From contig OZ260661.1 of assembly GCA_965285935.1 (NCBI GenBank), positions 88,226,001-88,290,000 on the forward strand: DNA of 64,000 nt, read 5' to 3'. A model generated the notes under the pieces. It did not search any database. It saw only the letters and a program-made list of their open reading frames with translations, and was not told the origin of the DNA. Below, in pieces: positions 1-53,710 of the stretch. Within the stretch, counting starts at the first letter, position 1. The number at the start of each line of letters is the position of its first letter. The DNA comes from Ophelia neglecta (taxonomy: Eukaryota). A program made the translations under genes and the position numbers.

Positions 1-3000
1 TGTTAGTAATTCCGTTCCTTTCATTTTTAATTGTACGTTTTTGACTATTTATCCCCTGTCCATCCTTTTCGGAATAACGCCACATGTTTTAAAATAATCT
101 CGTTTGCTTTCAAGTATCATATCAGATGATTATGAGATAATAGAAAACATTATTAGTTGTAGACGGGCTTGGTGCTTATCGGGCTTTTTAATATCAAGCG
201 TTGTTTCAGGCCTGTTTCACTCCCACGCCTACATTCCGTGGAAATTTTACAATATGTTAATGAAACAATGTGGCTGTGCATGAAGATAAGACCAAGCCTC
301 ACACGTGCTTTTAACATAAAACATGCCCATTCATACACGCTTACAAGCTCTGCCTGTCTTTACTTCATTTATGAATGTCATCGGCTTGTTGGAAACGGTA
401 ACAGGAAGCCACACCTATGGAAAGAAGAGAAACCTCCATCATGTAAACACGTAGTCATCTGTAATAATACAATATGTCTGCTCGTTTGTTAGGTAATGTG
501 GGTACCTCTGAAGCGGGTGTGGTTGTCTTTGTTACGTTAGGCAATCCATACAGATGCTGGTATTGCTCCTTTGTATAACTGCCGGACCCGTATGCCGCAT
601 CATATATGTATTATTACCGCCCACATGTGTCTGGGGATTATATGTACCTGTACTTTTAAAGGTGACGCCTTGCAAGTAAACATTTTTACTAAATAGGGCT
701 TAACCGGTGGATGCAATTCAAATTAAATGTCTGTGTCCTATAGACTCTAATCCTATTCCCTTTAAATGGTTAGCATCTCAGATTAAATCTGATCTGACTG
801 AGTAAAATATCATCCTTTTGTATAAAATTAAATCTTTTATGTTTCCATTGCATCATTATTGGCATTGCCCGCATTGGGCAGAAGCAGATGTTAGTAGAAA
901 TTCCCAAAAAAAATTAATGATTCTTTCTTGGCTAATTTTCAACTCTTTTTTATCAGATAATGGCAAAGCATGTAAGCTTGTATTATCGCCAAAGCGTGTG
1001 GTGTATACCTAGCTATACAAGATAACGACCGCAGCTTATTCACATGATTGTATGCATGGAAAATGAAGTTTTTAAACAAAAACAGTTATAGAGTGTCAAA
1101 GTTTAGCTTGTAATAAATTACTAGCATTTCATTTATTTCAATAATACGCCGTTCAATATATTTGCAGTTCAATAACCGTAGCCCAGTTTAAAGGCAGTGG
1201 ACGCTAGTGCAAAGCGTTCTCAGATATGTATGGTAAGAAAAACCTTGAGATTTCGCAGGCGCGACGCCTGCACTGGGCAAGGTCGAGCTGACATCTTTAA
1301 TACTAAGGTTGGGTTGTGTTTTCACGTAGACCCGATACCAGGAGACAAGCTTATCTTGGCGACCGAGATGGCACCACCCAACGTTTCAATAAATCTCTCT
1401 ACAGTGGTTGTGAAAGACCATTGTGTAGTTTGCACAAACACAATATATATAGGCTGCTAGCTCAGGACCCAAACAATACAAAATAGGTGACCCTTATAGC
1501 AGTTTGAAACCATTATCCAATTAAACAAATTAACTAGGCTCGAAAGGTCTTTGATTATAAACACAACTACATGTATACAATTATCATTTTGTTTAATCAA
1601 TTGTTTTATTGAACAATGGGAATTTGGCCAAAGTCCGTAGGGGCCGTTGTTTATTTCAGGTAGGCTTTTAGGCCTTTGTACAGGGTGAACATGGCATCTC
1701 AAATATATTATTCGTTAACACTTTTTTTTCAAGTCAATAATAAATAAACTGAATATTAAAATCTCTTTCAGATCGTTATAAAACTGCGATTGCAGCATTG
1801 CTCTTTCAATTCGCTGCATTCATTGGGGAAACGTCAATCAGAGGGAGAAGATGTTCTCGCCGAACAATGCCTCCGACACAATGCATGTTCCGAAGTGAAA
1901 CAGTCTTTCTGTAAGTGTGTTTAAGGCGTAACTAAATGGTAACACATGGTGAAACACATTTCAATGCAGTCAGCCCGGCTACCAACAAAACCATCCAGGC
2001 CAGATCCAAGGAGGATGAGGTGGGGGATGGTGTGGGGGTTTGGGTAGGGCCGGGGCTAACATTTGATCAATTCTTACTAATGAATGGTCGGCCATGTGCT
2101 TTAGTTATTATTTCTAATAACAGGAATCGTCACCTGATCTAGTCCACTTGTATACAATTATTCAGTTAATAAAATTTGCACTGGATCCGGTTTGTACCCG
2201 GGCAGGACTTGTTTTAATTTATATCATAATACGTCACTTTTAATGGCATTTGTAAAATATAATTCGCTTGTCAGTACAAATAACTTGCGGAACTCCCTAT
2301 AGGTGTCCCTTGTAAAGCAAGCATATGATTATATAAGATTATAGTACGAAGAAACTTAAAAAGACACCGACGTAATATTAATGCTCGATTAATCAAAGGC
2401 ATCCGATTCGCCATATTCCTTCCAAAAACGCTCGCCTCTTATTATCAGCTTATCGAATTTGAGATTCTATCCAAGGTATCAAATTTGAGATTTTATCTGA
2501 GGGGTAAAGCCTTGCATTTATACCGTCCGACAGCCAACATCCTTCCGTGTAAAGGTATATAAAAGGTCCCGTCAAGATAACCTTTTGCAAATTGACAGTT
2601 TGGTTTCTTTGATTTCTATACCCTTTAGAAGGTCCTTAATTGTCTGCAGACAGGCTGGTTTGGAATATTTAACAGGATGTGATACGTTTCACATGCCTCC
2701 CTTTATGTTTATGACAAAAGACAAATAAAACCACACAACTCCTTACCGCATCGTACAGACACGACTCGGGTTTGGTATTCATGCTTGCTATCTAGTATGT
2801 TTATCGTGTAACCTGCCCGAGGGCTGTCTCAACAAATGCCTTGTTCAAATTCTGCATTCATTTGCGCGGGGGGGGGGGGGGGGGGGGTATTAAGTGGCTT
2901 AATGATAAAGTTCGATTAGATCTAACAGTCCGGAGGTTGATTCATATGTCTTGATTAACTTATTTAATAGCCTCTATTTTATCAATCACCCTGCTACTTA

Positions 3001-3423
3001 TTAATATAAATACGCTGTAATGTAGAGAGTGTGGTTGGGATGGGGAGGGTGGGGGGGGGGAAGGGGGCCAGGTTACAACAGCAGGTTATTATTACTGATT
3101 TATCATTTAGCTTATTCTTAAAACAAGGCAATGATACATAAAAGTGTAAAACCATCGATTAAAAAATAAGACATATATCTGGAACAAAAATGGTAGATAT
3201 TTTGAGGCCTGACAACGACGAGACAGCTTCTATAGCCATCGTGTTTAATGGTCTCATTCGGGTGTCTACTTCGGCTGATCCGGCTTGTCATGCGCGCCGG
3301 GCTGCCCTTGCCCTGGCCTTGACTGCATGGTCACTGCAGACAGCCGAGACATCTGCTGTCTCAGGGGCATGTTAATGATGTGGAATGGGGCCCGGAATGG
3401 GAATAATGACCGCGTGAACGATC

Positions 3424-3437
3424 AGGTCAGAAGGTCA
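3424..3437 (+). promoter_or_regulatory. Perfect nuclear-receptor DR2 element
   Basis: AGGTCA-GA-AGGTCA within a GC-rich, apparently non-repetitive block. Confidence 0.45.
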
Positions 3438-6400
3438 GTTCCTTGCCGATGATATGGTGATGACATTAGTTTGAGGGTGAGGGTGAGAAAAGTAGTCCCG
3501 TCTATGGAACTTCCTGCAGAACCACGTGAAGCCCTTGGAATATGTGCCACGTGGTTGGTTGGGCGGGGTTCGGTTTGGCGCACTGGGGAAGCTGGTTTTG
3601 CAGGATGCATATATATTTACGGATACCTTCCGCATTTCTAAAATAATTTAAATGCACTTTGCATAGTAATTCGGGCTTGATCCTCAGCCGCCAATGCATT
3701 TAGAAAGAATCATTTACGGGGCAGAAAATAATAATGACACCAATAAGGGCTCAGGATTAGGGGTCTTTAGGTTTATTTCATTAAATAATTCCACGAGAGC
3801 TAGAGAAATAGTAGAACACGCTTAGTTAGACTAATCATAAATACACAAGTCTAATTATATATAGGCGTATAGGTATATTTGGTGCCAACGGTACAATGTC
3901 GATAGACTGTACTTGTACTCTGTTGAGTTGTTCAAACTTATCTGTACTCAAAGCTTGGTCACGTCAGAATAAGTGTCTTAAAAGGTATGTTCTTTTCATT
4001 TATTCATTTTATGCATTGCACGCAACTAGGGCATATTGCAAAAGGGCATGTCTAAATAAGTAAAATAAGTTGATAAATAGTATATAGGCCTAAATTCAGT
4101 TCTATTGTCGTAGATTTTAGGCCTAGCCTAGACGAGAATGTACAATGAGGTCGCCCGGCGCGTCTCATTGTACAGCGAGAGCCGGCGTGCAGACAATAGG
4201 CCCATTGGAATGTCATAGTAATTCAGCCATTTGCCCATCAGCAAACTATAGGTATTTAAAGTCAGATTTGAATTAGTACGGGTCAACGAGTATGCAAACA
4301 ATTAAAAGGGCGTTCAATTATAAAGTCCGGGGGGTTGGTTATTGGATTCAATGCCGGGAGGTTTAGTTTAAACGTCGCGAAATATAAAGAATACGGAATA
4401 CATAATCGAATGCCATACATTGTTGAATTGAATGAAGCGCGCATACGCTCGTGGAAAGGGCGAATCGCGCGATAAGTGTACCGAAACGCGCATATCACAT
4501 GGGTGATTAAATCCAATTAGATAATCAGCATTTGGAAATATGATATATATGAAACATAATCGTGTGGAAATACATCTATGGGTATAGCGCAATTGAATGG
4601 AGACCGAACATGAAAACATGGCTTTGATAGTTATATAATTCATTCAGACTAACTATTAATGTCCGTCGACGAACTTGACCGATAATCATAAACCAGAATA
4701 TATTATGTAGGCAAGCGGACCGAAGATCAAACTGTTGCATTTGATTGTCACGTGATTTCGGTTACTGGCTGACAAATAATCCGCAGACATACGATATGCA
4801 GGCCTACATACAATGTCCATTGTTAGCACCAGTTACGATTTTTACATAACATGTCTGGAACTTGACTCGCCCATGTGCATGGTGTGGTCATAGCTGGCGG
4901 TAAGCCATAGGCCATTAGGCCAATCGTCTGCTCGACCCGTATAGGCCTAAATGTGTCAAGTTTGCTCTGACAAAAGTATAGCTCCTTCTCCAAGCGTTCA
5001 TTTAAATAAATAAAAAACCGACAATGAAGTAAAGTCGAAATTAAGCAAAATAATTGTTATAATGAAATATATATGGGTTAAAATTGAAAACAACCCGCTG
5101 CACAGAAGTTGAGATTTTAGAAGGGTCAGTTCAGTGAGCAGGTACAGTGATATATCACTCAATTTGCACCCGTTTGGGAGCAGTGGTGTAGACGAGATTA
5201 CTTAGTGTACATGAGTATATTTGTTCCAAAATCATTTATAGTTAACCAAAAGCCTAAAAGTGTTGGCCATTGTCAATGTATATGAAATATCACGAGCTAT
5301 GTTAAGCGTTAATCAAGAATGTTTGTAAAAATGTCACTTCATAATGTCACTTTATTATGAAACAATAGGCTATAATGCAATTGTAAATTGATTAACACAG
5401 CTTCTTGTCCAGTTTATTTATCATTGTTATTGCAGTATGGACCCTTGGGCTATTTTTAGGACATAAATTAAAGCAACAGAAATTGTACTGAATGACATCT
5501 ACATACAGATAACGTTTAAGGAACAATTAAGTCGTGAATCGCACGATAGCTTGTGTGCCCTTCCCGCGTTCATTAGACCAAACAGTGATGCATTCTTCAC
5601 CTCAATCAGAGGGCTTCACACTTTGTACCTTCAAGTGTTGGTATATTGTTACATTGTACCATTATCCCGTGTCTTCAATTGGCATGTAATAGTTTGGTCA
5701 GGTTTAATCAGTACATGATCTACTGTAACAATAAAGACGCATCCTTATCTTAATGGACGCGACCAGAATCCTTTTGTAGAAATACACAACAGTTCCCCCA
5801 CACGTATTGTAGTTTTTCTCTTTGCACAGGGATGTGCATGTCACCCCATGAACAATCAGCGTCTTCCCCCCCCCCCCTGCCCGACAACCTTCGTCTAAGC
5901 CGTATCTGACACCTGACATCCGCAGCAGCCCTCGGGCATCGTTGTCTACTTTATTAATACATTGCGAAATCTAGCTACAAAATTGTTGGGTTTATTGATG
6001 TCAGTTTTTAATGATTTATTTAATAAAATCACACTGAACCTAGGCCTATATACATGCCATATTAAATGCTAAAGACTAGGCTCACTGCCATAGCTGGACT
6101 TCATTCCCCATGGTTTAGTATAATACCCGGTGTAATAATTCCCCTTTTTGCCCTCAGTGAGGTAAGTAAACATGATTATATCTTAAGCCAGGGAAACTCA
6201 CTGTAAGGCACGAATGACGCTAGAATGAGGGTGACCCTCTACTTGAGTGTAAATTAATGAAAATGACAGAGGTTAAATAAATAAATAAAATACATGGTTA
6301 AATAAGTGGATAAATGAATAGAGTTATTGGATTGCTAGTAACCAATTCAGTTCGAAGGGTGAACTTATCTCAAAACAATGAAAAATGAAATGTAGAATAA

Positions 6401-12220: not shown

Positions 12221-12797
12221 TGTTACTTGAAATATTTCGAAGAAGTCTACATATAGGCCAATCACTGTGTTCAATTGTATGTTATATAACTTGGCCTCTC
12301 TTGGCTAGGCACTCCAGACAGTACTCATGGATTCGTACATATATAGTGTAGGCCTATGTCTGCTTGGTCAAGCACAATCTTGCTATACTGGCCCGCCGTT
12401 TCATATGCAACTTGCAGGTAGGTGAACGGATTACGTCTAGAATATCTGCTACAAACAATTAGAAGCCACTCCCAACTTATTATTTTGATATGGTGGCAAA
12501 CAGCGGCAGCAATTTGATGCTTACCCAAATTAGCCCTTGGAATAAAACCTGCCCTCCAGCGTTTTCCGATATATCCGACGCCTAACTGCTCGCATCGTAC
12601 GAAAAAGGAGTCTGACATGCCTATACTGACTATTGCTCGATGATCCCCTTTTAGAGTAACTGCTCTACCTGACCAGGAACTGAAAATTTATAAAAAGCTA
12701 AACTACAAATTCTATTATTTTTCGATTATATAATTTAGATAGAAATATCTTTTAAAACTGTGTATTTTAAGGCCAACTGACACTAAGACCAACGCCA

Positions 12798-18638: not shown

Positions 18639-19309
18639 TGACAGCAGATTTTTTCTGGCCATCTGATTGCCCTTTAAGGGTTTAGACCAAGGTCATGACC
18701 TACAATATGGCAAAATTCGACATTGATTTCATGAAAAAGGGTTTTTTTCTCAGCAAATATCCACAGGTAGACATTGATTGAATTCATTTTATTAACATTG
18801 ATAAAACAGGAGTTAACTTGTCTTTATTTGGAATGTTATAAGAAAAGAAAAACTAATCAAGTAATCAGGGCTGACCGGTCTTATTTTTCAGATAGTTACC
18901 TTGAATCTAGCAAAACCCGAAAGACCGGCAATATTGAGCAATTATTAAAGTAATTGTGCGCTTTTATTCTTAAACATATACTTTTATCTAAAATCAATTA
19001 CAATCTAACATGGTATTATTATTGACTCCTACACTAACGTTTAATATTATAACTCATATTTTGGTTCCGAATTGATCCAATTCTGTAAATTTTCGTGACT
19101 TTATTTTTATGGAGCTGGCCGTGTTATAGATTGCATGATGGCTCCATATGTTCCAAATCCAAGGAGCCATGGTCTTTTAATCATTAGGCCTACACAGCCA
19201 GAGGCCTCACGAGGCCTATAGTCATGTTGATCTACATGTCCTTACGGGCACAGCTCGGTCAGCGGATCCTAGTTACTGAATGAGTCGGAGTGAAACACAT
19301 GGCGTGAGT

Positions 19310-19890
19310 GGTGTGTGGTGACGTATGGGTGGTGGAGTGGGATGGGGGGGGTGATGGGGGTGGGTAGAGGTATGGGGTGGTGGAGTGGGATGGGGGGTGA
19401 TGGGGGTGGGTATAGGTATGGGGTGGTGAAGAAGGATGGGGGATGGGGGGGGGGGGTGATGGTTGTGGGTAGAGGGATGGGGTGTGGTGGGGGTGGGTAG
19501 ACGTATGGGGTAGTGGAGTGGGATCGATGGGGGATGGGGGTTGATGGGGGTGGGGTGAGGTATTGGATGGTGGAGTGGGATGGGGTGTGGTGGGGTGTGG
19601 TGGGGTGTGGTGAGGTATGGGGTGGTGGAGTGGGATGGGGGATGGGGGGGTGATGGGGGATGATGGGGTTGGGTAGAGGTATGTGGTGGTGGAGTGGGAT
19701 GAGGGATGGGGGGTGACTGAGGTGGGGTGAGCTATGGGGTGGTGGAGTGCGATGGGGGTGATGGGGGAGGGAGGAGGTATGGGATGGTGGAGTGGGATGG
19801 GGGTGATGGGGGAGGGAGGAGGTATGGGGTGTTGGAGTGGGATGGGGGTGATGGGGGTGGGTAGAGGTATGGGATGGTGGGATGGGGTGC
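19310..19890 (+). repeat. G-rich minisatellite, ~45-bp unit
   Basis: Unit approx. GAGGTATGGGGTGGTGGAGTGGGATGGGGGTGATGGGGGTGGGTA, roughly a dozen diverged copies. Confidence 0.95.
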
Positions 19891-22800
19891 CGAGTCTTTC
19901 TAAATTACTACGCGTAGTATACAATTATGAGGAAAAAGCTGTTTTCGCTAAACTTCTGACGCTAGCTCTATAGGCCTATAGTGAAATAATAAAAGTGTCA
20001 TTCTTGATTGGTATGTGTTTTTCTTCATATCGTCTGTACATAGTACACAGTAAATGGCCTTTCAATGAAAATAGGATCGAAATATGCTCTAATCTTCTTC
20101 GTTTAGGCAATTCCTTTGTCAACAGGACTAGTAAAGATTAAATTAAGCTAGGGTCGAATGTCAAGTTTATTAGGAAAACTAAATAGTATGCGGCAATGAT
20201 GCTACAGAAAATAAATAAAATTAATCACATTATTGACATAAGAAAATAGAATAGGGCAGGTTTCACCGTCACGGTTTTATAAAGCTAAGGGCATAAAGGC
20301 CGAATGTTAGAGCACTTACCATAAAGGCTGGGTGGTTTCTGTTTATTTTGTAAATGTTTTTTCATTTGCAGAATAGCGTCACGTATGGTGTCTGAGTATT
20401 ATCACTGTGATATTACACGCTCAACCTCACTGAGTTAATGTCATCAGGTCATGTCCATTTAATATAATTGATCGTACGTGACTAGGACGCACGGCTATTC
20501 AAATTTTTACTTCGGTACACAGAGAAACTATGTAGAAACAAACGCTTCAAATCAATAAAATAAGTGCAAGAGGACAGTCAAATATTCAAATCACGTACGT
20601 CATCACAAAAACACATGCACAGTAAACGCCCATCCCAGACAATATAATATTGATTTGAATTAATATATTCTCGGCTCCACCTGTTCACGTGCAGCTGCTG
20701 TTACCATTCATCACAAAATCGACCAGAAAAGAATTTGTATTGGCCATTTCTCTCACTCCCACGCTATTTACCTAAGGATGTTAATCGGGGAACATGTGTT
20801 CTCGATTACAAAAAAACTGTCTGTGTAGTGTTCTATTGAAATGTGTTATTTTTAGATTAATCAGTTTCTCCGCGCTTTGATAATACCATGGAACATTGAT
20901 AATATAGAAACAAGGAAACAATTGACTTCCGATCTTGTTTGTATTTCGGAGAGAATAAACTAGATTAATGAATTTTGCTTGTTATGCCCATTAGAGTAAG
21001 AATAGGCAATGTTTAGAGTCACAATCAGGACGAGTCGGGTCGGAGAGTGCGTCAGCCCTCGCTTGGTTTCTCATTCATGCATGCCTTACAAGTGTGCACT
21101 GAAGAAGCAGAACATAATGTAAGTGTTATGGTTGGCCTATCACGTAATCTGGTTATCTCCAAAAAGAAACCTACCCATACTAGCATCCTAGCAAGCCAAT
21201 CAAGTTCTAGATGCATGATGGTATTCAAAATTATATAAGTACATATTCGTTTGAATATACAGAGAGCAAACTTCAGTGAAGACAAATTACATTAATTTTT
21301 TGACTAAGCACTTTTATTTTGCCCTTTCCCACTATCTAACAAACTTTATTCTCTCTCCAAATGTAGACGACAAACATTTCTTTTACAACTACCCCCCCCC
21401 CCCCCCGATATATCTATTCATTAGGAGCGTGCGAACTGATAAAAGTCGTCGTTTCTGCATCAGGCAAGACGGGATTGTATTAGTTTCTAATCAAATCAAT
21501 CAACTAGAACTGAACCTTAATGAACAAATTCATTCGGACAATTATTTTCAGCCCATACTCTCGTATATGTGGCATCAAAATCAGTCTTCACAAGTTGTAT
21601 GAGGCGGACATAGCATATGCCTATGTTGGAAAAGTATATGATTCAGCTAACATTTTGGTGTCTGGAAAAGTCAGTATACTACCTTAGAAACGAGAAAATA
21701 TACTGCGATAAATGTTATGTATACAGGGTAGCTCTTTATTGATACTAGCACTGCAAATCAACGAGGACAACTACACTAGAGGATGAAACCCTCCGCTATG
21801 TTGTTTTACCTCACAAAATATGCATCCAGATAGTCACAATAACGACCTGACTATGGGGCGTGTTCGTTGTTAGAACCGACCGGTTAAGGGGAGAAGTTAT
21901 ATTTGTTCTCAGCAGATGGCAAACAGACATAGCAGACTATGTCGACTATTCTGTTTGTTTTAATTGTGAAGATCTGCCCCGACAGGGTTGACCATACGCC
22001 GGGAGCGGCAGTCGGTTTACTCTCAGCGTTCGCTTGTCAAAGAAGACGTGCCGAACACAAAACAGAGAAAATGAAAACCAATGAGTCCAGTTCGGTTTAG
22101 TATAGACGAGATCGTGTGTAAATAGACTGACTGTGTTCTCACTGCCCTAATATCAACAGTTTTGGCCGCTGGCACCAGACCTCACTTGACCGGAATATGC
22201 GGACTAGGCCTGGTACATATATACTCCATAGTTCACCTTTTTACACCCGGGAAGAAGCTGTCCACCGGCATGCACTCAGCTTTACCTTTATATATAGCAT
22301 TGTGTATATGACACTCACTTTTTGAATGAAAGCAAAACGAGGCGCGATAAAAAGTCAAGCTTCAATTTGAAATCGTCCACCCAGATAATTAAAACACTGT
22401 ACATCATGTCTTGGTGAATACGTCGATATTTTTTTTTGTTATTTTGAAAATATTCCTCTGTTAGTCCTACCCCTATACATTTTGCTTCATAGAAGAAATC
22501 TTTCGATATCTTGGATCGATCCATCACCAGATACAAGTATCATCGATGTGGACGATATGGTTTTGTTTACTCGACCTTGAAGAAGGGGTCAAGTTCACTC
22601 TGTATTTCATACATAAACTTCTGCACCTTAAGAAAAATAAATGTAAGAATTTTGACGGACTAACTGAATTCATGTTAATAGGATGACATCCAACCGGTAG
22701 ATGACACATTTATAAACATAACTGTTTTTTTCTGACACTGGTCGATCTAAGGTGTGAATTAAAATGCTCCCGTCCGACGCTAACTTGCCTATTTCCATCT

Positions 22801-24649
22801 GGTTCCTGCGCATTAACGAGTTAATCCTGAATATATTTATTGAAAAATAGTTCTTCTAAAAATAATCAACGAAATAAATGTTCCCTGAGGCAGATTATCA
22901 TGGGATCATCTGTATTTGATGTGCGTGATTTCGGTCGCAGCAGATATTCTAGTTTATTTTCTCAGCAATAATATTGTGCGTCATATCCATGATGTTGAGA
23001 TCAGTAGCCCGTGCTTAAAAGAAAGCACGTGCCGTGTTAGTCTGGTTGATGATAACGTATCAGAGCTTTATTGGGCCAAATAATTAATGACTAGCCGGCT
23101 CAGTTATGAATTTCAGTGAACCTGGCGTTATCGCTCAGATAAGAGCATCGGAATTCACTGGCATGCCTCAGAAACTATGTCAGGAATCCTCGGATACACC
23201 AGATTCGATGTGGACCTGTACAGCCCATAAATCGTGTGCAGGATTAATATGAAATACGGCGCCCCCATGCCACAAAGTGATCATATCGAGCAGACGTTCA
23301 TCAACGGTTATTATCGATTATATATTTTTGTGAAAAATCTTTGACTCACTGAACAGATGCTGACATTTGCACATCCATTTAAATTACTACCAGAATGACA
23401 AGTTATGTACACCTCACGGCTTACACAGATATACATGTATGAGATGCTTGTTTATTCATTTCTAAAGTTCCTTTTTTTTAATTGGTTAATACAATGGTTG
23501 AGGGCGTGTCCGTTGCTGGTCCACTATGTAGAGACTGGACTTAGACTGCACTAGTATATATTCTGTATCAAATTTACATCATTAAATGTCCAGTGGACAG
23601 ACCTAAATGCACTGAGATATTGACCGTATGATCATATACTCGCAGAAGTGACACCCATGACATATAGAGAACAGATAGTAATTAACACTTAAATGTGAAC
23701 ACAAGAGATAAATGTACGCTACAGGGAACAATTTAAACTTGCTGTGCCTATTGGCATAATGTACTGAGGTCGTATGAACTCAGTGGAGTAAGGTCACACA
23801 TTCCAGACGGCGGCATCGGTGTAAAACGTGTATACCACCGAGGTTTCACTCTACCACCCTGGAATGTCGGAGCTGCGAAAAAACTTCATTATATACAGCA
23901 AAAAACATGCCTCGTTAAAACATTCAACTGATGTTTGTTCTTAAAAAATGTAGTGAGTAAAGTGTTTCAGCTCCAGTATTTTCAGGTCACATATAGGTTA
24001 ACTTATCAGTAGGAACATTGTTGATGACCCGCCCTCATTCAACAGACACAGACAGCTATAGCATAATATGTCGGGTTTGATAGGGCTTAAAAAGTCACTT
24101 AGTCCCAGAGGAAAAGTTTGATCATGTCATCTTGTTTGGCATTGCATGAACTCGTGGTGTGTGCAATGTTTGTATATACATGTACATTCAAAGAGCGCAG
24201 TTCACTAGATGCTATAGCTCATCATCTATATCATGTTGTGGCAACATCTCTGACATAAAAGTTCACAAAATATACTATAGCTCTAAATGTATCACTGCCA
24301 CAATTCACTCATCCATGTAGGCACTACACATATTAAATAGAAGTTTGTGAATGGTACCACTTTAATTAATGAATATTGTTTTTTTTTTTTTTATAAATGT
24401 GAAGTATCGCCATTTTTGTCATTGACATTGCTTAATGACATGCCATCTTGACATAACTATCTTGACTTGTTAAAGGGTTAAAGATAAAAAGGGACGGAGA
24501 TAAAAAAAACGACAGTCATTCCCGACCATGAAAATATATCTTAAGCCGCGCGGTAGAATGAGCAGGACATGGCATTGTTTAATTTCACTTCTCCCTGGCA
24601 ACTCATACATATATCTGATATAGATATATGTATCTATAGGCCTACCTAT

Positions 24650-27879: not shown

Positions 27880-29056
27880 TAAGCATTTAGAAACGCAGGC
27901 TATCATATTTGGATCGCTGCCAAGGCGGTTATCTTGGAAAATTTCGGAAAATTGAACGCAGTTTCCTGGAAACTAGAACTGTTGGTGAACCATGGTACTG
28001 ACTAAAATCACAATTACAGAATCACTTCAGCAACCTTACTTTTCGGCTTCGGCCTAATTGATAGGTTATTAAATAAGCTTAATTAGTATGATTTCACATT
28101 GTTTGCATCTAGTTCTATAATATGACAGTTGAAGCTTCAGCGTTAAACTTGCTCTTTGGTCGCGATCCCAGCTTATACCATCGGACATGTGTACTCTTGT
28201 ACAGTAACACATCTGTCCAGACACTCCAGACATAAGGTCTTATCAGTCATAAAAGCATAACATTAACATTGGTTTTAAATCAAATTCTTCAATAAAATCC
28301 ATTTCAACAAGCAATTTTAACAAAACTATTGCCTATATGCATACAGCTGCCCATCCCATTCAAAATGTCTACTTTTGAATGTTTTTATGTCTAGAACCAA
28401 CACCTCCATACAAAATGTAACAGCTGATGGAACAGAGGGTGGATAAAAATCAATAATAAAAGCAAATCTGTCGATGAATGGGGCTAGCCAGTTATTACAC
28501 AGCTGAAACACATATGGAGATATGCATGTACAAGTTACATTACAAGGGTTTTCAACAGACGGGGCTGAAAGCGAAGGCAGTAATGTTTCATTAGGAAAAC
28601 CCAATGAAACACATGCTAATGTCGAAACGTGTTTGCAAAATAAAACTTTGTCTTTGCATTTCCAATTTTAGTGTACACAGAAGTCCCTTCCACATTGTGA
28701 TAAAAAGGTTGGTGAAAGTTAGAGAACTTCCTGGTCGAGCAGGATCAATACTGTAGTCTCGTGTGCCCTGTTCAATAAAACAGTGTGAATAGCATTAGCT
28801 GTTCTATACAGTTAGGTCTTGAGAAATGACCGTACTGCATGTTATCAAGTCATTTTTTATAGTTCAAGGGTAAGATTAACAGATATAAACATATTGCATT
28901 TGGGCCTGTTTTCATTTGTAAATACTGATTTGTTATTCGTTTGACAAATCATCTGATGCGAAGCTTATAGGAAGAAAATCGTCGATTTAAAATATAAAGT
29001 TAGAGTTACATGTGTGTCATGTCACATGATCTCTGCCTGGTAGGTAAACACAAATA

Positions 29057-29182
29057 TCACAGGTAGGCCTACTTGTATCAGGATGGTAGCTAAAAAAACG
29101 CTTAGAAACTCTCGACTTATTTTTTAGTATAGATGTTTTTAGCAGTATTTCTCCTCAAACATCCTGATACAAATACCTGTGA
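29057..29182. mobile_element. Short MITE/inverted repeat whose left arm carries an extra GGCCTA
   Basis: Left arm TCACAGGTA[GGCCTA]CTTGTATCAGGATG (29057-29085); reverse complement of right arm TCACAGGTATTTGTATCAGGATG (29160-29182). Confidence 0.75.
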
Positions 29183-30619
29183 CAAATATAGGGGAAAGCA
29201 CGTCAAGACCAAGTTTATGGACTGACACAAGACCTGTATTATTGCATACTTTCTATATGCTTCCTTTAAAGCAAAACTGTTCGTTAGTGTTCCTTAATAA
29301 TAATAATGACAACCCTTTATAATGTCCTTAATAGGGGGAAGGCCAAGATATAGTTTCCCCTCTGCCTGTAGCAAGGTCACAAGTATATAAACACTGAGTA
29401 CTATGATAACAGTGCGAGACCAGGAAGGTTTGCTGGCAATTCTAAAAGGGATTTCCCCGAAAAAAGCATAGCTTGAAGTCTCTTGTCACGTGAACTAGCA
29501 ATTAGTTGAGTAGTGGCGGGTTGGTCACACTAAAAAGTAGAATCCTGTTTTCGCTTTCTCAACGCCGGAGTGAAATACGTAGAATTTGGTTTATTCATAA
29601 TTGCCTGATTTCCGATTCTATTTATGCTTGTCAAAATTTCCTTGTTTTCCATTATTGTCAGGTCTATAAGCCTCATGCCACATCCTTGTGCTGGGGCACG
29701 CCGTTAAAACGGTTAAAAATTCAATGAAGGTTTCAAAACATATTCAAATATAATTATACATCAAGTATAAATAAATGGCATATCCCTTATAATATTGTTG
29801 GCCTATATGGTTATATGCGGGGATACCAAATAATAGTAGGTGCAAAATAGCCAACTTTATGTAAATTTAGGCCAATAGGCCTACATAAAAGCCAGGAGAG
29901 ACGGTTCTCATAATCCTTGCTCTTTTCCTTTCATCATAAACATTCACTATAGGTTCAGGGATGTAGCCTTTTAATGTTTTCTACGTGCATGTTACAGGTT
30001 TTACCCGTCACAGAAAAGGGCAGGATTTCATTTTTTAATGATCCCTCTTATAAGTGTTAACTGTATATATACAGATTAACTGTATGTCAACTATCAAACT
30101 ATCTATCTATCTATCAAACTACACGTGCACTGTATAGTAAATAAACAACATTATGCTGTTATCTTCGCGCGCAAAGCTCATGAGCCGTATATGATAAATA
30201 TATTATTAAAACTACAGTACATTTCTTTTACTATCACAGTGCTGGAACGGATAAGCGTACCGTATGTTACGGTAATCAAACATTGCGCATGTCAAAGCGC
30301 TGTCGCAGGTAATGCCTGATGTTAAGTCTGTTAAAGATGGCACAGTCCAAGATCCTCGTGCTCCGTAGCAATAAATACAGAACAAAATATGCAGCCGTTC
30401 GTTAACTCGTATTAGCGAATTAAATGGATAAATGTTGCTCATAAGTTGGCTTGATAAGCGTAATGGTTTTTGCCCAAATGGACAAAATAAGCATAAAGGC
30501 ACCAGAATGCATCTTATATGACTTTACAGCATAGATCAACTGGGCTTTATCTTTTCCGTCAATTTATAGTTATTAATATCTAGTAGTACGTCCTCTGTAG
30601 ACCAAGCATATACTCAGAC

Positions 30620-38020: not shown

Positions 38021-39759
38021 CCGAAAAACCATGAACATTTCACAGTGTGTGGCTGATTTTAAACAGCCAATGCCTAATAAGAATGATATCAGAGCTAATT
38101 GTCCTGGGTTTTGTCCGTGCAGAGTCAACTAATAAATTATATAATAAAGACGTCCCGATCTAGGCCATACACACAGTGAACCAGACATGTATATCACAGA
38201 TATTTTGTCAGCCAGACACCATCAATCAGAAAACTCACAGTTTATCTGTTGAGGCAAGACTTTGTGAAGGCCCTGCATCCCTGGATGGAAATCAAATACG
38301 GCAAAAACCGTAATAAAATCGTACAGATGGGGTTTGTTTTAAGACCCCCCTGCACACCTTCTTCATCGGTCTTGGTGGCCCACTCACCATAAGCACAGGG
38401 ATGTCCCACAGTTTATACCATTGCATGCTGTTGCCTCTCGACTGAAAAAAGCTGCAAAGGGCAGTGGCAGCTGCAGGCAGACCCTCTTCATAAAAGCCTC
38501 AGTCTGTCACCCAGTCAGCCTCATAGAAATAATCAGACCAGCTGTCCTGGTCCCTGGAAACAAGGCAATTGCATGGGGTAATAAGAATCTGTACTTTGGG
38601 CTGTCAGCATTATATTAGACTACTGCCAAAAACTGACCATTACAAGTTATTGCCTTCTACACAATCTAGAATTTACGTCTAGTTTAGTTGGTTAATCGCT
38701 TATCTTGTCCTAGATTACAGACTTCTCCGTGCCATGTTCACACTTCATCTTGACATTGTCTGACTATACCGTCCCTCTTGCCATTACAGTAGCCTTTCTC
38801 GACATATCCCCTTCGGATAGTCATTTAGAGTTTTCCAACGCCTGCCAACCTCTCTTCCCTTCCCGTCCCAGTTTGTCTACTTTTCTCTTGGCAATATGCC
38901 TCCTGTAGGAGCATTTAACCTATATTCTCTATATTTCAGTGTGAGTTAACTATTCTTTTCATATTATCTGATTATGCAGACCTCGCCTATTATTCTACTC
39001 TGTCGATTTCTCTTGTTTTTTTGCCACATAATCAGTCAGTGCCAATCGTGACTATTAGCAAATAGTCACGATATGCATTGACAGATTGTAAATGGCGTGT
39101 ATTCTTTTCTTTGACCCCCGATCACTGACTTCTTTGCTTCATTTTAATTTTTCCCTGGCCTGTTCTTCGCGTAGCCCGTGTTCTCTGTCCACTTCACTTG
39201 CCCTTTCCATACACAGGTGACCTAAACGACACTGGAATAAAAAACGGGAATTATGCCGATACAAACAGCTTACAAATATGGTTATCGCCATACCCAGTAC
39301 AAGATAAACAACACGATAACCGAAGGTGAATTATATAAAAGGCCTACAAAACTCAGTTTAAATTCCACTTATTATGAGGTGATAGCGGCTATCATCATAT
39401 CAAAATAACACAGTTTAATGCCACGTCCTCGAATGATCGTGATAAACACTGCGTTATATAGTTGTCATAAAACACCAAAAATACCGAGGCTATATGGTTA
39501 ATAATTCCGACCATTTTCTGTTATTATAAGCCAAAGCTATGAGTTCGGGATATTAATAGCGATATTATAATTCTGTAAAGTTAGACTTGCGCTGTACATA
39601 ATGTATCTGTTGTGTGTAAACTATTCTTGTTTCTCAATCTTAGTGTACCGACTTCTGTTCGGCCCAAATCTGATTTTTTTTGCCATAATCGACTAGTCCT
39701 CTCTGCTCACCTTGGTCCCGAGTGTCTACAATATACATACTTATTTATATATAGGCCTA

Positions 39760-39936
39760 CAGTGAAACCTGTGAATTAAGACCACCTAAGGGACTGGAAA
39801 ATACTGGTCTGATTATACAGGTGGTCTGTTTACACAGGTTATTTTACATCCAAAGCGTACATTGGGTCTTCATATAAGTGGTCTGAATTGACAGGTGGTC
39901 TGGTCATAGAGGTGGTCTTTAAGGCAGGTTTCACTG
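39760..39936. mobile_element. Complete Tc1/mariner/pogo-type MITE (177 bp), TA TSD
   Basis: TA|CAGTGAAACCTG ... CAGGTTTCACTG|TA: perfect 12-bp TIRs, TA on both flanks, internal GACCACC/GGTGGTC repeats. Confidence 0.9.
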
Positions 39937-53614: not shown

Positions 53615-53710
53615 TATAGGCTTATAGGCCTATAGGCTTATACCTTTAGGCTATACCTATACCTATAGGCTATACCTATACCTATAGGCTATACCTATAG
53701 GCCCATAGGC
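53615..53710. repeat. Compound microsatellite of TAGGC(C/T)TA, TAGGCTA and TACCTA units
   Basis: TATAGGCTTATAGGCCTATAGGCTTATACCTTTAGGCTATACCTATACCTATAGGCTATACC... Confidence 0.9.

What the first reader, a model, noticed from the sequence alone, without database searches (positions are those of the whole stretch)
29057..29182. Internal evidence that TAGGCCTA is a transposon-type scar: extra GGCCTA at a TA in one arm of an inverted repeat
Seen: the arms are TCACAGGTA-GGCCTA-CTTGTATCAGGATG and (reverse complement) TCACAGGTA-TTTGTATCAGGATG. They match at 22/23 once GGCCTA is removed, so TA and TA-GG-CC-TA are alternative states of one site. Established: cut-and-paste elements with TA TSDs leave TA+end bases+TA footprints (Tc1 TACATGTA, Sleeping Beauty TACAGTA). 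Inference: this is the excision footprint of a TA-targeting element with 5'-GG...CC-3' termini.
Basis: partly seen in the sequence, partly recalled or inferred. Interest (0 to 1): 0.8.

Follow-up and report, generated by a model that had tools for sequence, protein, structure and literature searches.

The report
Recurrent GGCCTA scar at TA sites
One arm of a small hAT-like transposon in this annelid genome carries an extra GGCCTA at a TA, and the same 6-bp insertion arose independently in other copies, so the genome's ~70,000 TAGGCCTA sites look like insertion scars, probably left by a cut-and-paste transposon that I could not find.

Summary
Window 29058-29181 is a 124-bp MITE with a perfect 8-bp target-site duplication (ACAAATAT). 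Its arms match at 21/22 once GGCCTA (29066-29071) is removed.

About 170 related arms occur genome-wide, and their consensus has the plain TA state. Eight arms carry exactly GGCCTA at this same TA, and four carry close variants. Bearing arms include both left-type and right-type arms and one divergent subfamily. They sit next to TA-state arms in a tree, so the events are independent.

A second TA six bases away has no such insertion, so this is a sequence-level hotspot.

TAGGCCTA occurs 69,501 times in the genome. In my sample it is about 19-fold enriched in high-CpG (germline-unmethylated) DNA (44 sites against 2.3 expected) and at chance level in low-CpG gene-body DNA. One-mismatch variants imply roughly 15% decay per site, so the sites are old and not conserved.

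The transposon-footprint reading fits the polarity, TA duplication, uniformity, symmetric flanks and nested re-insertion. However, no TA-GG...CC-TA donor turned up. The two resident pogo-like elements whose ends I could read finish in CAGTG.

Other first-stage readers of this scan noted the same motif elsewhere in this genome.

The parts
29050..29057 (.). Left copy of the 8-bp target-site duplication ACAAATAT of the host MITE
   Evidence: Read directly; identical to 29182-29189.
29058..29085 (+). Left terminal inverted repeat of the MITE, carrying the 6-bp insertion
   Evidence: The genome-wide arm consensus is CACAGGTACTTGTATCAGGATG.
29064..29071 (.). TAGGCCTA octamer: the original TA plus 6 inserted bases. 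The insert can be parsed as GGCCTA (29066-71), AGGCCT (29065-70) or TAGGCC (29064-69).
   Evidence: It is absent from the right arm and from about 95% of related arms. It is present in contigs of 3 short-read runs from one sample.
29086..29159 (+). Internal region of the MITE; the two ends differ (left-type and right-type interiors)
29160..29181 (-). Right terminal inverted repeat, in the unmodified TA state
29182..29189 (.). Right copy of the 8-bp target-site duplication ACAAATAT

Best explanation
The GGCCTA in the left arm is a derived 6-bp insertion at a TA: TA became TA-GGCC-TA. The most likely cause is a cycle of insertion and excision by a TA-targeting cut-and-paste transposon of the Tc1/mariner/pogo kind. 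On this reading, insertion duplicated the TA. Excision left the element's terminal bases on both flanks as 3' overhangs, and end joining sealed them.

Shown here:
- the polarity (TA is ancestral);
- the TA duplication;
- recurrence at the same TA in independent copies;
- a sequence-level hotspot;
- genome-wide abundance, confinement to high-CpG DNA, and neutral decay.

Inferred, not shown:
- that the agent is a transposon;
- that its ends are 5'-GG...CC-3';
- my own suggestion that the ends are 5'-GGCC...GGCC-3' cut with a 4-nt stagger. Those overhangs would be self-complementary and could simply be ligated, which would explain the unusual uniformity of the scar.
For: Polarity and frequency:
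- The arm consensus in about 170 arms is the TA state.
- Exactly GGCCTA sits at this TA in the window copy and at C1:61883616, C7:13607239, C8:68718789, C12:24342662, C7:55704857, C8:49576456 and C7:63889860.
- Variants at the same TA are TAGCCTA (twice), TAGAACCTA and GGGCCTA.

Independence of the events:
- Bearing arms have different flanks and include both left-type and right-type interiors.
- A divergent subfamily with outer repeat ..GACGTTA again has GGCCTA in one arm only.
- In a tree of 36 arms, bearing arms are scattered and pair with TA-state arms: L026/L002 at 93% and L024/L035 at 91% bootstrap.

Site specificity:
- There are 0 such insertions at the second TA among about 89 good arms, against 4-5 among about 60 at the first TA.

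Features expected of a transposase:
- Flanks show a symmetric T(-2)A(-1)/T(+1)A(+2) preference, about 47% against 35%.
- Flanks are more palindromic than at control TA sites, p=0.003.
- A nested TAGGCCTAGGCCTA exists.
- Tc1/mariner elements cut the non-transferred strand a few nucleotides inside the element, and end joining then leaves element-derived footprints between the TA copies (PMC8151067).

Other routes are not favoured:
- In a family whose consensus is TAGACCTA, change to TAGGCCTA (4 of 100 copies) is no commoner than other transitions, so there is no substitution drive toward the motif.
Against: No donor was found:
- There is no convincing TA-GG...CC-TA inverted-repeat pair in about 330 kb.
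- No recurrent sequence follows TAGG or TAGGCC.
- No element is trapped at the hotspot.
- Two candidate ends were single-copy.
- The two pogo-like elements whose ends I could read finish in TA|CAGTG. The mariner Pfam model gave no hit, but its control also failed. The Tc1 model gave only 8 hits.
- From memory, I know of no Tc1/mariner family with GG termini.

Other difficulties:
- One-sided scars (TAGGTA, TACCTA) are not enriched, and end-joining footprints are usually more varied.
- No TA/TAGGCCTA polymorphism was seen at 3 sites.
- After correcting for decay, the local density is about 1 event per kb, which is very high.
- The complete absence from low-CpG DNA needs an extra assumption.
Confidence: 0.55

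Rival explanations
1. A sequence-specific insertion process that is not a conventional transposon footprint. For example, an unknown nuclease, integrase or repair activity could open TA (or cut T|A) in unmethylated germline DNA and write in a fixed AGGCCT/GGCC.
For: No donor element was found despite several directed searches. The product is extremely uniform: 45 exact sites against 6 with one extra base between TAGG and CCTA. The motif is strictly confined to high-CpG DNA, 44 against 2.3 expected there and 1 against 0.9 in low-CpG DNA. One TA is a strong hotspot while a neighbouring TA is not.
Against: I know of no precedent for such an activity. TA duplication around a short palindromic insert is the classical signature of staggered transposase cuts. 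My sample covers only about 0.04% of the genome, so a low-copy or extinct donor would easily be missed.
Confidence: 0.2
2. TAGGCCTA is a functional palindromic motif of unmethylated intergenic DNA, such as a binding site for a dimeric factor, kept frequent by selection whatever its mutational origin.
For: It is an 8-bp palindrome. It is about 7-fold over base-composition expectation genome-wide (69,501 sites, against my estimate of about 9,500 scaled) and about 19-fold in high-CpG DNA. It is regionally patterned and absent from a gene-body block.
Against: The excess of one-mismatch variants (98 against 38.8 expected, beside 43 perfect sites) implies about 15% decay per site, so there is no visible purifying selection. 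There is no substitution drive toward the motif from a near-cognate consensus. Another 60 kb of high-CpG DNA is at chance level. Sites lie inside transposon repeats.
Confidence: 0.1
3. The shared GGCCTA reflects common descent. One MITE master copy acquired the insertion once and its descendants inherited it, so the 'recurrence' is an artefact.
For: The arms are short and diverged (median end branch 0.34 changes per column) and the tree is weakly resolved.
Against: The insertion occurs in left-type and in right-type arms, and always in only one arm of an element. It also occurs in a subfamily with a different outer repeat. Variants are found in the CAAGATG subfamily. Bearing arms pair with TA-state arms in the tree. 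Even if this rival were true, TA would remain the ancestral state.
Confidence: 0.05

Closest known systems
Tc1/mariner/pogo excision footprints (e.g. the Sleeping Beauty CAG footprint between TA copies; Tc1 TACATGTA)
   Same: The target is a TA that becomes duplicated. A few fixed bases sit between the two TA copies. There is a dominant canonical form with rare variants, target hotspots, and a symmetric AT-rich flank preference (mechanism from PMC8151067).
   Different: The scar bases are GG/CC, whereas the two resident TA-targeting elements whose ends I read finish in CAGTG. No donor was found. The scar is much more uniform than usual. It is abundant enough to be the most over-represented non-simple octamer in the window.
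piggyBac-type seamless excision through complementary TTAA overhangs
   Same: If the donor ends were GGCC cut with a 4-nt stagger, the overhangs would be self-complementary and could be ligated directly. That would give one uniform product, by the same logic as piggyBac (inference).
   Different: piggyBac restores the target exactly and leaves no extra bases (PMC8151067). Here 6 bp remain.
Highly iterated palindrome HIP1 (GCGATCGC) of cyanobacteria
   Same: An 8-bp palindrome far above expectation across a genome (PMC4390886 appeared in the hit list; I did not read it in full).
   Different: Here the motif demonstrably arises by a 6-bp insertion at TA and decays afterwards. No substitution drive was seen. 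The host is an animal.
hAT-type MITEs (the host element only)
   Same: It has an 8-bp target-site duplication, short terminal inverted repeats, a length of about 120 bp and many copies.
   Different: The terminal pentamer is CACAG in most copies and CAGAG in some, so it fits the usual hAT end motif only partly. I looked for no autonomous partner.

Membership tests
Tc1/mariner-type excision footprint | The empty state of the site is a single TA; the scar is TA + a few bases + TA | tested here: met
   The other arm of the same element and about 170 related arms have TA. Bearing arms have TA-GGCC-TA.
Tc1/mariner-type excision footprint | The scar bases equal the terminal bases of a TA-flanked inverted-repeat element present in the genome | tested here: inconclusive
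   No TA-GG...CC-TA element was found in about 330 kb or at the hotspot. The two pogo-like elements read end in CAGTG. Only about 0.04% of the genome could be read.
Tc1/mariner-type excision footprint | Minor variant scars occur beside the canonical one | tested here: met
   TAGCCTA (twice), TAGAACCTA and GGGCCTA at the same TA. TAGGGCCTA (three times) and TAGGCCCTA (once) elsewhere. However, TAGGTA and TACCTA are not enriched.
Tc1/mariner-type excision footprint | Symmetric target preference around the TA | tested here: met
   T(-2)A(-1) and T(+1)A(+2) at about 47% against 35% background. Flanks are more palindromic than at control TA sites, p=0.003. The effect is modest.
Tc1/mariner-type excision footprint | Presence/absence polymorphism, or orthologous empty sites | tested here: inconclusive
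   Contigs of 3 runs from one sample show GGCCTA present at 29064 and no indel at the sites covered. No related genome was available.
hAT-like MITE (host element) | 8-bp target-site duplication, terminal inverted repeats, small size, many copies | tested here: met
   ACAAATAT on both sides, arms 21/22, 118 bp without the insert. About 170 arms genome-wide with different flanks.
Iterated palindrome kept by selection or repair bias (HIP1-like) | The motif is created by substitutions from near-cognate sequences and is conserved | tested here: not met
   In a family with consensus TAGACCTA, change to TAGGCCTA (4 of 100 copies) is no commoner than other transitions. One-mismatch decay products exceed perfect sites.

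The most novel reading that the evidence does not exclude
An agent not yet described writes a fixed hexamer (AGGCCT into T|A, equivalent to GGCC with TA duplication) into germline-unmethylated DNA of this annelid. It could be a TA-targeting cut-and-paste transposon lineage with GGCC termini and self-ligating excision ends, or a non-transposon insertion activity. It has acted on the order of 10^5 times and leaves methylated gene bodies untouched, so the scars would form a readable fossil map of past germline chromatin state.
Probability: 0.25. Interest if true: 0.85.

Novelty: new variant of a known kind. Interest (0 to 1): 0.62.

Why it matters
If these are excision scars, this genome holds a very large and unusually clean fossil record of cut-and-paste transposition. 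There are about 70,000 intact octamers, and probably several times more events once decay is allowed for. That record would let the number of events, the target choice and the regional activity be read directly from one assembly.

The near-complete absence from low-CpG (germline-methylated) gene bodies would be direct evidence for one of two things in an invertebrate: either DNA methylation or its linked chromatin shields gene bodies from this kind of insertion, or it channels repair away from end joining.

If no donor exists, the motif points to an unknown insertion mechanism. Either way, TAGGCCTA is a practical marker for annotating unmethylated compartments and for dating repeats in this species.

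Tried and rejected
- Sampling for paralogues: an all-against-all BLAST of 270 kb gave no paralogue for any window site because the sample was too small.
- Apparent counter-examples: at 12349 and in L016, paralogues carry TAGACCTA or TAGACCCA without a 6-bp gap. The family consensus is itself TAGACCTA, and A>G changes are no commoner than other transitions, so this is ordinary background.
- Candidate donor ends, all rejected:
  - ...GTCGCC|TA at C2:21649776 is single-copy.
  - CACAGGTAGGCCGGGG... is an internal part of another repeat.
  - The truncated-looking copies at C7:55704857, C8:49576456 and C7:63889860 have no partner end within 9 kb. One of them turned out to be a divergent subfamily.
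  - The pair at window 19971-24644 consists of two full octamers, not element ends.
- No excess of TAGG-N(2-40)-CCTA spacings, so there are no small deletion derivatives.
- ISL2EU elements were considered as donor, but their duplication is AT, not TA (PMC4482050).
- Untemplated G addition is unlikely because the 2+2 form dominates.
- Local templating is excluded: TAGG and CCTA do not occur in the arms.
- Sequencing artefact is excluded by short-read contigs.
- Literature searches on the octamer found only primers and unrelated uses.

Full report
**What is at the coordinates**

Window 29058-29181 is a 124-bp miniature transposon. It is flanked by a perfect 8-bp target-site duplication, ACAAATAT (29050-57 and 29182-89). 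Its left arm reads CACAGG-TA-GGCCTA-CTTGTATCAGGATG. Its right arm, reverse-complemented, reads CACAGG-TA-TTTGTATCAGGATG. With the six bases removed the arms match at 21/22. The 8-bp duplication and short arms make the host element hAT-like. It is only the substrate of the event.

**Which state is ancestral**

Gapped pattern searches of the whole 762-Mb genome print the matched letters. They found 191-194 related arms against 28-58 for the reversed control. The consensus is CACAGGTACTTGTATCAGGATG, which is the plain TA state.

Exactly GGCCTA at this TA occurs in eight arms: the window copy, C1:61883616, C7:13607239, C8:68718789, C12:24342662, C7:55704857, C8:49576456 and C7:63889860. Close variants at the same TA are TAGCCTA (twice), TAGAACCTA and GGGCCTA. 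Other insertions at this TA are single, unrelated cases.

**Are the events independent?**

I fetched 24 copies to check this.
- Their flanks all differ.
- Where both arms are recognisable, only one arm carries the insertion.
- Bearing arms include left-type interiors (window, C7:13607239) and right-type interiors (C1:61883616, C7:55704857, C8:49576456).
- The copy at C7:55704857 belongs to a divergent subfamily whose outer repeat is ..GACGTTA instead of CACAGGTA. One of its arms has GGCCTA at the homologous TA and the other does not.
- In a tree of 36 arms built without the insertion site, bearing arms are scattered and pair with TA-state arms (93% and 91% bootstrap for two pairs). The tree is otherwise poorly resolved because the arms are short and old.

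I take at least four or five independent events as established.

**Specificity of the site**

The same arms contain a second TA six bases further in (TTGTA|TCAGG). Among all arms with up to two mismatches (about 89), none has GGCCTA there. At the first TA, 4-5 of about 60 do. The first TA sits in a near-palindrome, ACAGGTACTTGT.

About 5% of arms are hit, against roughly 0.1-0.5% of TA sites in general. This is a real sequence-level hotspot.

**The genome-wide picture**

TAGGCCTA occurs 69,501 times, against 3,592 for the reversed control, which contains a CpG and is therefore biased low. Base composition predicts about 9,500 (my own estimate, scaled). In the window it is the most over-represented octamer that is not a simple run, and the 24 contexts are unrelated.

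The density is very patchy and follows CpG content.
- In the contiguous 164 kb around the window, blocks with CpG observed/expected of 0.7-0.87 hold 2-6 sites per 8 kb.
- A 40-kb block at 0.26-0.53, which holds a Nup93 gene, has none.
- Pooled, high-CpG DNA has 44 sites against 2.3 expected. Low-CpG DNA has 1 against 0.9.
- TACATGTA, by contrast, is enriched in both compartments.
- High CpG is necessary but not sufficient: another 60 kb of high-CpG DNA is at chance level.

Low CpG observed/expected in invertebrates is the usual mark of germline gene-body methylation. That is established knowledge; I did not measure methylation.

**Age and selection**

In the dense 122 kb there are 43 perfect sites (1.5 expected) and 98 one-mismatch variants (38.8 expected). 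That implies about 15% change per position since insertion. Both transitions and transversions are in excess. The sites are therefore old on average and decay without visible constraint.

Contigs from three short-read runs of one sample span the finding's site with GGCCTA present. They show no presence/absence difference at the sites covered.

**Other routes to the octamer**

Two repeat copies carrying TAGGCCTA have paralogues with TAGACCTA or TAGACCCA and no 6-bp gap. A sample of 100 copies of that family shows the consensus is TAGACCTA. A>G changes to TAGGCCTA (4 copies, two of them linked) are no commoner than other transitions. This is ordinary background and not a drive toward the motif.

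**Mechanism**

The signature is a duplicated TA around a short fixed palindrome. There is a dominant form with rare variants. Flanks show a symmetric T-A/T-A preference and are more palindromic than at control TA sites. There is a nested TAGGCCTAGGCCTA and a target hotspot.

All of this is what TA-targeting cut-and-paste elements leave when the non-transferred strand is cut inside the element and the ends are joined (PMC8151067).

My own inference is that ends of the form GGCC cut with a 4-nt stagger would give self-complementary overhangs. These could be joined by simple ligation, which would explain the uniformity.

**What is missing**

The donor is missing.
- I found no convincing TA-GG...CC-TA repeat pair in about 330 kb.
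- No recurrent sequence follows TAGG or TAGGCC.
- There are no deletion derivatives.
- No element is trapped at the hotspot.
- Two candidate ends proved single-copy or internal to other repeats.
- The genome is rich in pogo-type transposases, with at least 150 hits and many open frames. The two elements I could read end in TA|CAGTG.
- Tc1-type hits are few. The mariner model found nothing, but its control also failed.

A low-copy or extinct donor is quite possible, because I read only about 0.04% of the genome.

**Verdict**

The observation and its polarity are confirmed and extended. The footprint reading is the best available but unproven, and I put it at about 0.55.

The confinement to high-CpG DNA and the hotspot are new facts that any explanation must cover. 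Possible reasons for the confinement, all inference, are:
- integration is excluded from methylated chromatin;
- elements that land there are silenced and never excise;
- breaks in transcribed gene bodies are repaired by recombination rather than end joining.

Other first-stage readers of this scan flagged the same octamer in other parts of this genome. I treat those notes as leads only.

Noticed in passing
window 1-64000 plus L003-L012 (C1:88226001-88390000): CpG observed/expected is bimodal: 0.7-0.87 in most of the stretch and 0.26-0.53 in a 40-kb block (about 80-120 kb from the window start) that holds a Nup93 gene. TAGGCCTA is absent from the low-CpG block.
   Followed up: yes
window 39752-39780: A pogo-like element end (TA|CAGTGAAACCTGTGAATTAAGACCACC) abuts a TAGGCCTA and uses its second TA as target. 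Further copies of this repeat lie at window 44670, 44948 and 56591, and in L003, L010 and L018-L019.
   Followed up: partly
window 53617-53700: Three octamer-like units in tandem (TAGGCTTA-TAGGCCTA-TAGGCTTA), followed by a repeated TAGGCTATACCTA motif. This may be re-targeting or slippage of the scar.
   Followed up: no
G000:C1:639363-664293 (not fetched): Tandem arrays with a 40-bp period in which each unit contains TAGGCCTA. Part of the genome-wide count therefore comes from satellites.
   Followed up: no
L004:807-2729 (-): A 641-codon open frame without introns encodes most of Nup93. The best matches are polychaete annelids at 65-69% identity, which places the genome among annelids.
   Followed up: partly
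window 19259-19924 (-): A 221-codon open frame of proline-rich low-complexity repeats with no Pfam match lies between two TAGGCCTA sites (19185 and 19971).
   Followed up: partly
L056 (C2:40216900-40220700): A young pogo-type element family longer than 3.8 kb has six copies at 96-99% identity. It contains two TAGGCCTA sites (2392, 2533) and a nested 728-bp repeat (2716-3443) with more than 20 copies.
   Followed up: partly
window, whole: Runs of G (GGGGGGGG 88 times) and G-rich words such as GATGGGGG (22 times) are strongly over-represented. This points to a G-rich repeat that I did not examine.
   Followed up: no
L028 (C12:24342660-24342693): One MITE arm reads CACAGGTA-CTGCAGG-TA-GGCC-TA-CTTG. 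A second insertion bounded by TA sits next to the GGCC scar.
   Followed up: no
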